DNA of 63,859 bases, the filler included, from Octopus bimaculoides (Eukaryota), in assembly GCF_001194135.2 (NCBI RefSeq). It is 6 parts of 4 records of this genome, joined end to end, with 100 filler letters (N's around TTAATTAATTAA, not from the genome) between each part and the next. Parts side by side here need not be neighbours in the genome. Positions count along the whole stretch, not along the records: positions 1 to 8,515 come from NC_068983.1; 5 more parts are not named here. One strand, 5' to 3'. Below, piece after piece: positions 1,673-3,805 of the stretch. A program made the translations under genes and the position numbers. The notes beneath the pieces are model-generated. The model made no database searches, had not been told where the DNA came from, and saw only the letters and a program-made list of their open reading frames with translations. Each line of letters opens with the position of its first letter. Position 1 is the stretch's first letter.

Positions 1673-2325
1673 ATTTCTCAATGTACCTATGTGTACAGTC
1701 AGTGAGAAACCATTTGTAAGAGACCACGGTCCCATGTTATGCAAACCAATTTAGTTTACATGTGATTAAACATATGCCAGGTCCTTCACACGTTTCATAC
1801 AACTTTGTATTGAGTAATTTTATAATTTTAAAAATTATAGTAAATAAATGATGGATATAAACGTGGATATTATTAGTTAAACACTGCCATCTAGTGCAGT
1901 TATCAAAATTATTACATATAAACACGTAATGAACTACTTACTGAATAAAATAAGTTTCCAATTTCAGCAGGAATGTCTCCCGAAAAAGCAGTTGGCGAGG
2001 CAACAGAGTATACAGGAGAAAATGTATAATGCAAAGCTTACAATAGTAAAGGAAACATTAACACAAACAAAATCAAGCAGAAAATATTTAATTTGAAAGA
2101 TTTAACATTCTTTTAATTATAGAATTGTTTCCAATTAGTTATGCAATTACCAAAAGAAAAATTTCGTAAGAAACCTATTGGAAATACAAAGTAGGAATGG
2201 TTCTATTACATCATCATAGCTATGCAGGTAGGATGTGGAATATGCCAATTTACATTTAACTCATACACACATAAATATCAATTTGTACGTAGAGGAGACA
2301 ATTTCGAAGGGAGAGTAGTTTGATA

Positions 2326-3805
2326 TTAGTAATTAGAACACTTCAAGGCACAGCAATATCTAAGGTTTTCCTTAAAATATATTTCCGATGTTGTTTCGTT
2401 AAATTCTATATTGATAGATTTAGATTGAGAGTTATAATTTAACCCAGAACATGTCATAGGTATGTAACCAAAATATTGGTAATCAGTTGCTGTCCCGCAA
2501 ATATAGATATCCGATGAACTATTCCGGTAAATAAGATATTTGTTTTTCAATAGAATATTTCTTAATGTACAGCGTGGTTTAGGACTATTTACCATTATAA
2601 CATCTAACATTCTCGTTAGATTTTGTCGCATTTCGAAGTTGACACGAATAAGTAATTTTTGTATTTTCTGGAACTGAGCTGTATTTTCTGGAAGATATTG
2701 CAAAGTGTCTCCATTCCAGTAGCCATTTATGCCAAAGTCGTGGTACAATGGACAGTTCGTTACACATCTTGGAATTGTTCCACTCCAGATTCCATTTTCT
2801 AAGCATGTTCTTCTCGACTCTCCCAATAACGTTCCTCCTGCTGAACAGCTATATTCAATAACTGAAGAATTACGTGACAAAATAAAATTTATTCCATTTC
2901 GTTTCTCAATTTTACAAGTTTTTCTGCACTTTATGTCTGGATACCATTTACCTAACAAGCATTGAACGACACCAGACGTGACAGGAATGAAAGATCGTTT
3001 GCAAGAATATAACACTTTCTCTCCTTCATTGATTAAGGTTCTTGGTTTTAAAATTGTGTCTCCAGAAATAGTCAACACTCTGCCAGCAATTTCAGGTACA
3101 ACACAACTCAAAACGCAAACAGGTGTCAGAAAGTTCCAGCTACCGTCTCGAAGACAAGTTAATACAGATTCACCTTTCAGATTATATGGTTTTAAGCAAC
3201 TGAAAGAAACTGTTTCGTTAATTTCAACTTCATTTGTGTTGTTTGNNNNNNNNNNGGGTGGATGCGGCGGGAGACATTTGATAGTTTCACAAACTGGTGA
3301 TGGAGACGACCACTGTTTAGTTTCTTGACACTGTATTGAATTGTTTCCTCGCAAAAAATAACCAGATAGGCAGGAAAAGAGAACAACAGAGTTATATGTG
3401 TATGTAGCATTTGTCACAAAACTGTGTGCAGGTTTATGAAAAATGGGACAGGTTATTAACTTACATTTTTTATCTTCATACATCCATTTACCATTCCAAC
3501 AAATAATATCAGCCGTATTCTCTACGCTTGCTTCAAAATAGCGGTTGCACTTTTGTTGCAGGTGTATTTTTTCTTCTTCCCATTTCAAAGTATATTGTAT
3601 TCGACTGTTGTTCAACTTCGGCAAAGGACCACAGTTTAGGAGTTTTATCATTTGTTCAAAAAACCACGGAGTATAGTTGCTGTTGGTTGAAGTCGAATTA
3701 CTGTATTCCGACACAATTTTTTGCATTAACATTTCCAAATGTACTATTTTCACTTTTCACCGTTAATAGGAGAAAGAAAAGGAAACAAAATGTTTTGGAT
3801 ATCAT
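2326..3805 (-). CDS. Intronless multi-Sushi/CCP (SCR) domain surface or secreted protein: 5 CCP modules plus a ~145-aa Cys-containing C-terminal region; one frameshift near the N-terminus
   Basis: The 475-aa ORF holds five C..C..C..W..C modules (e.g. CPIFHK..SCLSGYFLRGNNSIQCQETKQWSSPSPVC) and many NxS/T sequons. A signal peptide MISKTFCFLFFLLLTVKS starts at ATG 3805 and joins the main ORF if one base is removed from the A6 run at 3717-3722. First in-frame ATG of the main ORF is 3732. 10-nt N gap at 3246-3255. Confidence 0.8.

What the first reader, a model, noticed from the sequence alone, without database searches (positions are those of the whole stretch)
2038..3805. Intronless five-CCP gene reconstructs to signal peptide + CCPs + unassigned Cys domain + hydrophobic tail, larger than the called ORF
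Seen: the ORF track misses both ends. Upstream, ATG 3805 encodes MISKTFCFLFFLLLTVKS, one base out of frame at an A6 run (3717-3722). Downstream of the stop at 2326, shifted frames give LISNYSPFEIV..YSTSYLHSYDDVIEPFLLC..GNCITNWKQFYN..KLNIFCLILFVLMFPLLL* (stop 2038-2040), ending in a terminal hydrophobic stretch like a GPI signal. The ~145 aa after CCP5 match nothing I recognise. Established: animal CCP modules are usually split by introns, whereas intronless CCP arrays occur in retrocopies and in poxvirus and herpesvirus complement-control proteins. Inference: a lineage-specific, heavily N-glycosylated surface protein family that arose by retroposition or capture; this copy is either decaying, mis-assembled or converted to a secreted form.
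Basis: partly seen in the sequence, partly recalled or inferred. Interest (0 to 1): 0.7.

Follow-up and report, generated by a model that had tools for sequence, protein, structure and literature searches.

The report
Transcribed octopus sushi-repeat pseudogene copy

Summary
The minus-strand ORF 3753..2326 is real. It belongs to a family of about 483-494 aa secreted proteins found only in octopods (Octopus bimaculoides, O. sinensis, Argonauta hians). Automatic annotation calls them "complement factor H-like", "SVEP1" or "P-selectin".

Intact members have a signal peptide, a short N-terminal region, six CCP/sushi modules (not five) and an 80-aa, 8-Cys C-terminal domain. That domain has no detectable relative elsewhere.

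The cause is an extra A at 3726/3727 (GTT[A]ATG), not the A6 run.

A +2/-2 pair of indels (about 2684 and 2587) scrambles 32 codons of CCP6 and removes two cysteines. A further Cys>Tyr change hits the C-terminal domain.

Independent DNA assemblies from four runs reproduce the sequence at all three indels, and RNA contigs do too, so none is an assembly error. The N gap is really 13 nt and in frame (PP-KHGSA-NNT).

The proposed GPI-like C-terminal extension is not supported. All homologues stop where this ORF stops. The downstream sequence is a conserved 3'UTR with indels that are not multiples of three, and it carries ATTAAA signals.

Every looked-up member has an uninterrupted coding sequence and a conserved TATA box, and a second copy begins at the window's right edge. 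This is a tandem array made by DNA duplication, and the window holds one decaying member.

The parts
3885..3894 (-). TATA box GTATAAAAGG, about 80-90 nt upstream of the ATG. It marks the core promoter of a single-exon transcription unit.
   Evidence: TATAAAAG(G) is conserved in five of the six aligned loci (window, L001, L002, L003, L005). L004 has the variant CTGTAAAAGA.
3752..3805 (-). Start codon and signal-peptide coding segment (MISKTFCFLFFLLLTVKS). It is out of frame with the rest of the gene.
   Evidence: It matches the family N-terminus MISRTFYFLFLIILTVKSEN. The frames are shown.
3726..3727 (-). +1 insertion (extra A in GTT[A]ATG) that uncouples the signal peptide from the mature protein.
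   Evidence: DNA alignment to five intact genes. The sequence is identical in DNA contigs of four runs and in an RNA contig covering 3642-4136.
3463..3633 (-). CCP1 (divergent sushi module, four Cys plus Trp).
   Evidence: Cys pattern and family alignment. Pfam finds six Sushi stretches in paralogue P0006.
3289..3450 (-). CCP2.
   Evidence: Best Pfam Sushi stretch, residues 102-155 of the ORF. Coordinates.
3115..3276 (-). CCP3, which contains the assembly gap 3246-3255. The true gap length is 13 nt and it is in frame.
   Evidence: Contig record coordinates in X1, X5 and X10 leave 13 nt between 3245 and 3256. The RNA loose end reads CACTTCCATGTTT. Paralogues have three more bases than the 10 N.
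2926..3105 (-). CCP4.
2764..2916 (-). CCP5.
2569..2754 (-). CCP6, disrupted. A +2 indel near 2683-2684 and a -2 indel after 2587 put 32 codons out of frame, and the module's second and third Cys are lost.
   Evidence: DNA alignment. tblastn finds P0001 residues 376-405 at 2680-2591 in another frame. DNA contigs of four runs match 2300-2860 exactly, as do RNA contigs.
2329..2568 (-). Family-specific Cys-rich C-terminal domain, all-beta in the model. This copy has five Cys instead of eight (six in the closest relative, P0001), including a Cys>Tyr change.
   Evidence: Alignments A2 and A4. No relatives outside the family. AlphaFold pLDDT is about 84-87 for residues 410-494 of P0002.
2326..2328 (-). 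Genuine stop codon, at the family's native C-terminus.
   Evidence: All full-length homologues end within one to three residues of this position.
2070..2325 (-). 3'UTR with ATTAAA signals at 2112-2117 and 2087-2092.
   Evidence: It is 80% identical to the O. sinensis locus, with indels that are not multiples of three. RNA contigs match exactly from 2191, and raw-read depth fades between 2185 and 2024.
8030..8515 (-). 3' end of a second family copy: the last 23 codons TTTSEIYAKENYASCCTLRCYNH*, stop at 8443-8445, then its 3'UTR. The copy is cut by the edge of the piece.
   Evidence: 89% identity to L003 11413-11806. Translation, alignment, tblastn.

Best explanation
**What it is.** The locus is a recently inactivated, still transcribed member of a tandemly duplicated gene family specific to octopods. 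The coding sequence is uninterrupted.

**What intact members encode.** Each makes a secreted, N-glycosylated protein of about 490 aa with these parts:
- a signal peptide;
- an N-terminal segment of about 40 aa;
- a rod of six CCP/sushi modules;
- a small disulfide-rich beta domain at the C-terminus that is unique to the family.

**What happened to this copy (shown).**
- An extra A at 3726/3727 separates the signal peptide from the mature protein.
- A +2/-2 indel pair scrambles the core of CCP6.
- A structural cysteine of the C-terminal domain has become tyrosine.

**Consequence (inferred).** Any translation product would lack a signal peptide or stop after 35 codons, so no working protein is expected.

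**Transcription.** RNA from the locus is unspliced and collinear with the genome. It is present at roughly 1-2% of the level of the nearly identical paralogues (contig depths; a rough measure). That the conserved TATA promoter drives it is inferred.

**Family function (inferred, not shown).**
- These are soluble extracellular binding proteins.
- The conserved CCP array (dN/dS about 0.3-0.5) serves as a scaffold.
- The fast-evolving C-terminal domain (dN about equal to dS, Cys framework kept) sets ligand specificity.
- The family turns over by gene birth and death.
For: **Family membership and ends.** Eleven homologues at E of 1e-122 to 1e-226 cover 99-100% of the reconstructed 492 aa. They begin with the same signal peptide and end at the same stop.

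**Disabling lesions.**
- Alignment to five intact genes shows +1 at 3727, +2 at 2684 and -2 at 2587.
- tblastn recovers the out-of-frame CCP6 segment.
- The Cys count is 28, against 32 in canonical members and 30 in P0001.

**Not an artefact.**
- Exact single-copy-depth DNA contigs from four runs cover 2300-2860 and 3642-4000 (3701-4000 in X1).
- RNA contigs match exactly over 2191-2864 and 3642-4136.
- The gap is 13 nt and in frame.

**No introns in the coding sequence.**
- Five family genes have gene ranges of 1467-1485 nt, equal to their CDS.
- No splice joints appear in RNA contigs or raw reads.

**Tandem DNA duplication.**
- A conserved TATA box and upstream blocks are shared by the paralogues.
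- A second copy lies at 8030-8515.
- Three O. bimaculoides paralogues lie within 0.3 Mb on CM046603.1.

**Secreted, not anchored.** The C-termini are hydrophilic and end just after the last Cys.

**Fold.** AlphaFold plus Foldseek match the paralogue to CCP arrays such as factor H, beta2-glycoprotein I and CD46, with E down to 1e-17.

**Evolutionary rates.**
Against: - Pairwise dN/dS of this copy against its relatives (0.45-0.71) does not differ from values among intact members (0.34-0.68; 1.17 for the near-identical L001/L002 pair). Relaxed constraint is therefore not visible, and inactivation must be recent.
- The +2/-2 pair restores the frame. This could mean an intermediate allele was still under selection.
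- Only a handful of individuals were examined, so an intact allele may still segregate.
- The middle of the gene (about 2865-3641) shares k-mers with 4-6 near-identical paralogues. Reads there cannot be assigned to this copy.
- Neither the function of the family nor the tissue of expression could be determined, because run metadata are coded.
Confidence: 0.85

Rival explanations
1. The gene is intact and the frameshifts and gap are assembly or sequencing errors, for example collapse of paralogues or a homopolymer miscall at the A6 run.
For: The draft assembly has many N gaps. The middle of the gene is shared with several near-identical paralogues, with DNA word depth 4-6 times the single-copy depth.
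Against: - Independent DNA contigs from four runs (dated 2015, 2022, 2022 and 2025) match the indel sites exactly at single-copy depth. They cover 3642-4000 (3701-4000 in X1) and 2300-2860.
- RNA contigs from three or four runs carry the same sequence.
- The N-terminal frameshift is not in the homopolymer.
Confidence: 0.03
2. This is a functional gene with a larger product: signal peptide, CCPs, Cys domain and a C-terminal hydrophobic GPI-type signal extending to 2038.
For: Short conserved-looking peptide strings can be read downstream of the stop. The same strings appear downstream of the neighbouring copy and of the O. sinensis gene.
Against: - That conservation is at the nucleotide level and crosses frames and stop codons.
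- The 3' regions differ by indels of 1, 2, 8 and 14 nt.
- All annotated homologues in three species stop at the same place as this ORF.
- The 'hydrophobic tail' (2040-2095) lies next to or beyond the ATTAAA signals (2112-2117 and 2087-2092), where RNA depth has nearly vanished.
Confidence: 0.02
3. The copy still makes a protein. One route is a non-secreted product from an internal start (the first in-frame ATG is at 3733). Another is that the allele with the rewritten CCP6 was a functional variant and only the +1 is recent or polymorphic.
For: - A 475-codon ORF survives.
- The +2/-2 indels compensate each other within 97 nt.
- The locus is transcribed.
- dN/dS is not raised.
Against: - Without a signal peptide, a protein with 27 Cys and 12 sequons is not expected to fold in the cytosol.
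- CCP6 loses both its disulfides.
- The C-terminal domain is left with an odd number of Cys.
- The extra A is present in every DNA and RNA dataset examined.
Confidence: 0.08
4. This copy, or the whole family, arose by retroposition of a spliced mRNA or by capture from a large DNA virus that encodes CCP proteins.
For: The coding sequence is uninterrupted in every member looked up. Structurally the array resembles viral complement-control proteins as much as cellular ones (SPICE, 5fob_C, E=4.5e-11).
Against: - Paralogues share promoter sequence, including the TATA box, upstream of the transcript, and they sit in tandem.
- No poly(A) remnant or target-site duplication was seen.
- No multi-exon parent was found.
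- No relative was found among 2.9 million viral contigs.
- For the founder gene the question stays open.
Confidence: 0.1

Closest known systems
Uncharacterised octopod proteins that NCBI labels 'complement factor H-like', 'SVEP1', 'CUB and sushi domain-containing protein 3-like' or 'P-selectin' (P0001-P0011; O. sinensis, O. bimaculoides, Argonauta hians)
   Same: - 49-72% amino-acid identity over the full length.
- The same signal peptide, six CCPs, C-terminal Cys domain and stop position.
- An uninterrupted coding sequence and, in most looked-up loci, the TATA promoter.
   Different: The window copy carries +1, +2 and -2 indels and has lost cysteines, so it is a pseudogene. The names given to its relatives are automatic and reflect only the sushi repeats.
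Regulators of complement activation and other soluble CCP arrays (factor H, CD46, CD55, beta2-glycoprotein I)
   Same: A rod of consecutive CCP/sushi modules in a glycoprotein with a signal peptide. Foldseek E values run from 1e-17 to 1e-10. Like beta2-glycoprotein I, the array ends in an atypical C-terminal module.
   Different: - No orthology: at E<=0.001 only octopod family members and two generic 10-CCP proteins of unknown source were found, and no complement regulator.
- Sequence identity is 15-22%.
- The C-terminal domain is an orphan.
- Vertebrate genes of this kind are multi-exon (my own knowledge).
- No complement-related activity has been tested.
Poxvirus and herpesvirus complement-control proteins (VCP/SPICE)
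   Same: Intronless arrays of CCP modules. There is a structural match to SPICE (5fob_C).
   Different: They have four CCPs and lack the family's N- and C-terminal domains. No viral homologue was found. The octopus genes have eukaryotic TATA promoters and poly(A) signals and lie in chromosomal tandem arrays.
Other single-exon, tandemly expanded octopus gene families (protocadherins, C2H2 zinc fingers, GPCRs; my own knowledge and PMC6408891, PMC6339937)
   Same: Lineage-specific tandem expansion, with pseudogenised members expected under birth-and-death evolution.
   Different: The protein class is different. This family is small, with about five annotated members plus extra unannotated copies in O. 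bimaculoides.

Membership tests
Sushi/CCP/SCR domain proteins (Pfam PF00084) | Modules of about 60 aa with four conserved Cys and a conserved Trp that score above the Pfam gathering threshold | tested here: met
   98.9 bits against a cutoff of 20.7, with four stretches in the window ORF. Up to six stretches in paralogue P0006.
Sushi/CCP/SCR domain proteins (Pfam PF00084) | Beta-sandwich CCP fold arranged as an extended array | tested here: met
   The AlphaFold model of paralogue P0002 (mean pLDDT 70.5) matches factor H, beta2-glycoprotein I and CD46 arrays at E of 1e-17 to 1e-13. This was tested on the paralogue, not on the broken copy.
Octopod six-CCP secreted family (P0001-P0011) | Collinear full-length similarity, including the family-specific N-terminus and the C-terminal Cys domain | tested here: met
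   99-100% query coverage, E down to 1e-226. 81-87% nucleotide identity to L001-L003.
Octopod six-CCP secreted family (P0001-P0011) | Intact reading frame from signal peptide to stop (a functional member) | tested here: not met
   +1 at 3726/3727 and +2/-2 at about 2684/2587, verified in DNA and RNA.
Complement regulators (factor H / RCA) | Orthology to RCA genes, or C3b/C4b binding and cofactor or decay-accelerating activity | tested here: inconclusive
   No non-octopod relatives were found apart from two generic 10-CCP proteins of unknown source. Biochemical activity cannot be tested with these tools.
GPI-anchored surface proteins | An in-frame C-terminal hydrophobic signal after a small-residue omega site | tested here: not met
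Homologues end ...CCxLxCxx with no hydrophobic stretch.
Processed retrocopy | No introns, plus a poly(A) remnant, target-site duplications, no parental promoter and an identifiable multi-exon parent | tested here: not met
   Only the lack of introns is met. Promoter and TATA box are shared among paralogues, the copies are in tandem, similarity to the O. sinensis locus runs past the poly(A) signals without an A tract, and no multi-exon parent was found.
Viral CCP proteins (captured gene) | A closer relative in a viral genome than in cellular genomes | tested here: not met
   A scan of IMG/VR viral contigs found no relative at tblastn E<=1e-3.

The most novel reading that the evidence does not exclude
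The family may be an octopod innovation. A conserved six-CCP stalk would present an orphan C-terminal domain with a fixed disulfide framework and fast-changing sequence. That domain would act as a diversifying secreted recognition or effector module, for example in mucus, saliva/venom or immunity. The family would be maintained by tandem birth-and-death, and the window would catch one member just after its death. In that case the compensating +2/-2 pair would record a period when a CCP6-less variant was still selected.
Probability: 0.3. Interest if true: 0.5.

Novelty: new member of a known kind. Interest (0 to 1): 0.27.

Why it matters
For genome annotation:
- The ORF should be labelled a transcribed pseudogene of an octopod sushi-repeat family, not a larger GPI-anchored protein.
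- The 10-N gap can be replaced by 13 known bases.

For biology, the family is the more interesting object:
- It is a small tandem array, restricted to octopods, of TATA-driven genes with uninterrupted coding sequences.
- The products combine a constrained CCP rod with an orphan Cys-rich C-terminal domain that evolves at about the neutral rate.
- Its automatic names (factor H-like, SVEP1, P-selectin) are misleading.
- Characterising an intact member could reveal a new extracellular binding domain.

None of this overturns anything known.

Tried and rejected
1. **Mini-intron.** I looked for one that would join the signal-peptide frame to the ORF (GT donors at 3760, 3753, 3744, 3730, 3714 and 3712 to the AG at 3702/3701). 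No combination restores the frame, and no RNA joint is seen.

2. **Profile search with the C-terminal domain in the 5.8-billion-protein word-indexed database.** It returned nothing, not even the family itself, so it is uninformative. The exhaustive HMMER search replaced it and found only family members.

3. **Foldseek of the isolated C-terminal domain model (pLDDT 67.5).** The best hit had E=0.5. Weak SRCR-domain hits recurred (TM 0.38-0.48) but are not significant. The PDB sequence-profile search found nothing.

4. **Positive selection in the C-terminal domain.** dN/dS was 2.5 between the two closest paralogues, but Fisher p=0.087. Other pairs gave about 0.7-1.05. This was rejected as proof; it shows only relaxed or near-neutral change.

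5. **Relaxed constraint on the pseudogene.** It is not detectable by pairwise dN/dS.

6. **Tissue of expression.** Run metadata are coded. All that can be said is that one of three RNA libraries from a single study holds about 12-25 times more reads than the other two.

7. **Literature searches on this family.** They found no study of it.

8. **Rfam and tRNA scans of the window.** The only hits were sub-threshold mir-297 matches in low-complexity, microsatellite-like sequence.

9. **Two extra hits of the full-length profile (P0013, P0014).** These are generic 10-CCP proteins without the family's terminal domains.
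Full report
**1. What is in the sequence**

On the minus strand, frame 2 is open from 3753 to the stop at 2326-2328 (475 codons, including four X from a 10-N gap). Pfam finds four Sushi/CCP stretches (PF00084, E=2.1e-28).

Upstream, in the frame one base away, ATG 3805 encodes MISKTFCFLFFLLLTVKSENSTFGNVNAKNCVGIQ*. 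This has a classical n-h-c signal-peptide layout. The A6 run at 3717-3722 exists.

**2. The assembly gap (tested first, as asked)**

- Laid on 3256-3420, DNA contigs of 175 nt (X1, X10) and 196 nt (X5) match 3256-3362 and run on past 3256.
- Laid on 3160-3245, the same contigs match 3191-3245 or 3170-3245.
- The record coordinates leave exactly 13 contig bases between window 3245 and 3256 in all three runs.
- Thirteen RNA reads that end at 3245 continue with CACTTCCATGTTT and then GGGTGGATGCGGC, which is the window sequence from 3256.
- On the coding strand this reads CCC AAA CAT GGA AGT GCA AAC, that is PP-KHGSA-NNT. It matches the paralogues (PPKHGxxNNT).
- It also matches the 3-nt shortfall seen in the DNA alignment.

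The two sides are therefore continuous and in frame, and the gap is 13 nt rather than 10. One caveat applies. These contigs have about twice the single-copy depth and one or two mismatches, so they may be shared with a near-identical paralogue or allele.

**3. Relatives**

A protein search returned 11 proteins, all from octopods (Octopus sinensis, O. bimaculoides, Argonauta hians). E values ran from 1e-122 to 1e-226.

- Eight are full-length, at 483-494 aa, and cover 99-100% of a 492-aa reconstruction running from ATG 3805 to the stop at 2326.
- In the alignment (A1) they all begin MISRTFYFLFLIILTVKSEN...
- They all end ...CCxLxCxx, at the window's stop.
- A profile search with eight members added only two generic 10-CCP proteins from an ENA assembly. 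These lack the family's terminal domains.
- The window is 81-87% identical in DNA to the looked-up paralogue loci, but is none of them.
- The genome is evidently O. bimaculoides or something very close to it. The paralogues lie on GCA_001194135.2 CM046603.1 at 98.08-98.37 Mb and on CM046601.1.

**4. Architecture of the family**

Intact members have these parts:
- a signal peptide;
- an N-terminal segment of about 40 aa (low AlphaFold confidence, predicted helical);
- six CCP modules;
- a C-terminal domain of about 80 aa with eight cysteines.

Pfam finds six Sushi stretches in P0006. The sixth module has the four-Cys spacing, but a Gly replaces the usual Trp.

AlphaFold on P0002 with eight sequences gives mean pLDDT 70.5. 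The C-terminal 85 residues score 84-87 and are all-beta. Foldseek matches the array to factor H, CR2, beta2-glycoprotein I, CD46, CD55 and SPICE, with E from 1e-17 to 1e-10.

That domain has no detectable relatives:
- no Pfam hit;
- only family members among 1.84 billion representative proteins (three hits);
- no PDB sequence match;
- no significant fold match (best E=0.5).

**5. Why the ORF track 'misses' the N-terminus, and other damage**

A DNA alignment of the window copy with five intact genes shows four length differences:
- +1 at 3727;
- the 3-nt shortfall at the gap;
- +2 at about 2684;
- -2 at about 2587.

*The +1.* The window reads GTTAATGCAAAAAATT, where the paralogues read GTT-ATGAAAAAGATT or ATT-ATGCAAAATATT. 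The extra base is therefore the A in TT[A]ATG, not one of the A6 run.

*The +2/-2 pair.*
- It puts 32 codons of CCP6 out of frame.
- The ancestral frame still reads SVPENTKITYSCQLRNATKSNENVRCYNGK, and tblastn recovers it separately.
- The open frame reads AQFQKIQKLLIRVNFEMRQNLTRMLDVIMVN instead. This removes the second and third Cys of the module, so both its disulfides are lost.
- The +2 site looks like a templated patch. CCAGAAAATACA occurs twice, 20 nt apart.

*The cysteines.*
- The C-terminal domain has Tyr where the family has an almost invariant Cys. It keeps five Cys, against eight in canonical members and six in P0001.
- Total Cys is 28, one of them in the signal peptide, against 32.

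**6. Are these lesions real?**

Yes.
- DNA contigs from four runs dated 2015, 2022, 2022 and 2025 match 2300-2860 with no mismatch or gap, at single-copy depth.
- They also match 3642-4000, or 3701-4000 in X1.
- RNA contigs from X25, X26 and X27 match 2191/2196/2210-2864/2818 exactly. An X26 contig matches 3642-4136 exactly.

Mis-assembly is therefore excluded for all three indels.

**7. The C-terminal 'extension'**

This part of the finding is not supported.
- The stop at 2326 coincides with the family's C-terminus.
- I aligned the downstream sequence with three others: the downstream of the O. sinensis gene (L003), of L004, and of the second copy in the window.
- The window sequence is 80% identical to L003 and 70% identical to the second window copy (56% to L004). 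The sequences differ by indels of 1, 2, 8 and 14 nt, and the 'peptides' sit in different frames separated by stops.
- ATTAAA signals lie at 2112-2117 and 2087-2092.
- Raw RNA read depth falls from about 5-10 at 2186-2347 to 1.8 at 2105-2185 and 0.3 at 2024-2104, then to zero.
- The 'hydrophobic tail' (2040-2095) is T-rich sequence at or beyond the 3' end of the transcript.
- Intact proteins end one to three residues after the last Cys, with no hydrophobic segment. They are soluble secreted proteins, not GPI-anchored ones.

**8. Gene structure and origin**

- All five looked-up genes have gene ranges equal to a single uninterrupted CDS.
- No splice joint is seen in RNA contigs or in 148 raw RNA reads over 1700-4110.
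- TATAAAAG(G) lies about 80-90 nt upstream of the ATG in the window (3885-3894) and in four of the five other loci. L004 has the variant CTGTAAAAGA. Further upstream blocks are shared as well. No 5'UTR intron needs to be invoked.
- The last 23 codons, the stop and the 3'UTR of a second copy lie at 8030-8515 on the same strand. L004 carries another partial copy.
- DNA word depth in CCP1-3 is 4-6 times the single-copy depth.
- An old gene model (P0005) fuses two further copies.

This is a tandem array that grew by DNA-level duplication, probably with gene conversion. Two observations point that way:
- dS in CCP1-5 is much lower than in the terminal regions.
- The window's 5' flank resembles L001, while its 3' flank resembles L003.

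Retroposition of this copy is not supported, and no viral relatives exist in IMG/VR. Whether the founder gene was a retrogene cannot be decided here.

**9. Expression**

- Contigs specific to this copy have depth 17-40 in X25 and X26. Contigs shared with the paralogues reach 165-3370. On this rough measure the copy contributes about 1-2% of family RNA.
- Among three deep libraries from one study, X42 gave 132 reads, against 5 and 11 in the others. Expression is therefore sample-specific.
- The tissue is unknown because run metadata are coded.

**10. Evolutionary rates**

Rates are Nei-Gojobori estimates.
- Whole-gene dN/dS is 0.34-0.71 among most family pairs.
- CCP1-5 give 0.27-0.54 in the more divergent pairs, with Fisher p from 1e-8 to 0.009 for dN below dS. 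The near-identical L001/L002 pair gives 0.62 (p=0.25).
- The C-terminal domain gives 0.68-1.05. Between the two closest paralogues it gives 2.5, which is not significant (p=0.087).
- The C-terminal domain therefore keeps its cysteines but otherwise changes at about the neutral rate.
- The window copy's dN/dS (0.45-0.71) is not distinguishable from the rest, so inactivation is recent.

**11. Verdict**

- The locus is a transcribed, recently disabled member of an octopod-specific secreted six-CCP family with an uninterrupted coding sequence.
- The claimed larger product with a GPI-like tail is an over-reading of a conserved 3'UTR.
- What intact members do remains an inference. They are probably soluble extracellular binders, with a CCP scaffold and a variable C-terminal specificity domain.
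- Novelty: a new, dead member of a known kind. The family's orphan C-terminal domain is the only mildly novel element.

Noticed in passing
window 8030-8515 (minus strand): This is the 3' end of a second family copy. It holds the last 23 codons (TTTSEIYAKENYASCCTLRCYNH*), the stop at 8443-8445 and a 3'UTR. It is 89% identical to the O. sinensis P0001 locus and is cut by the edge of the piece. It shows a head-to-tail tandem arrangement about 6.1 kb from the studied copy.
   Followed up: partly
window 4104-4315 (minus-oriented), target-site duplications at 4093-4103 and 4316-4326: A SINE-like element of about 212 nt, flanked by an 11-bp direct repeat ATACATATATA and with a short A tail. RNA contig depth over it reaches about 2e5, so it belongs to a very abundant transcribed repeat family. 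ARAGORN and Rfam do not recognise it.
   Followed up: partly
window 5912-6451 (minus strand): A 179-aa ORF with a Pif1 helicase 2B-domain hit (E=4.9e-5, just under the Pfam cutoff). Its C-terminal motifs are typical of Helitron/Pif1-like helicases. It is probably a transposon remnant between the two family copies.
   Followed up: partly
family-wide; window 2329-2568 and L001-L005 at about 11230-11485: The 80-aa, 8-Cys C-terminal domain has no sequence or fold relatives outside the family. It evolves with dN about equal to dS, while CCP1-5 are constrained. P0001 and the window copy have lost the same Cys pair together.
   Followed up: yes
window 2865-3641 versus paralogues: CCP1-5 show much lower synonymous divergence between paralogues than the N- and C-terminal parts. 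Separately, the window's 5' flank resembles L001 while its 3' flank resembles L003. Both suggest gene conversion or unequal crossing-over within the array.
   Followed up: partly
window 2326-2340 versus L003 and the second window copy: A 10-nt direct-repeat unit (TAATTACTGA/TAATTACTAA) at the stop codon is present once in this copy, L001 and L004, and twice in L003 and the second window copy. Even so, both versions end the protein with ...N-Y/H-stop.
   Followed up: no
window 19-90 and 144-207; 480-720; 6560-6720: The sequence is rich in microsatellites: (GA)n, (CA)n and TATG-type repeats. Two mir-297 Rfam hits (about 35 bits against a gathering score of 90) fall in such low-complexity sequence and are chance matches.
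   Followed up: yes
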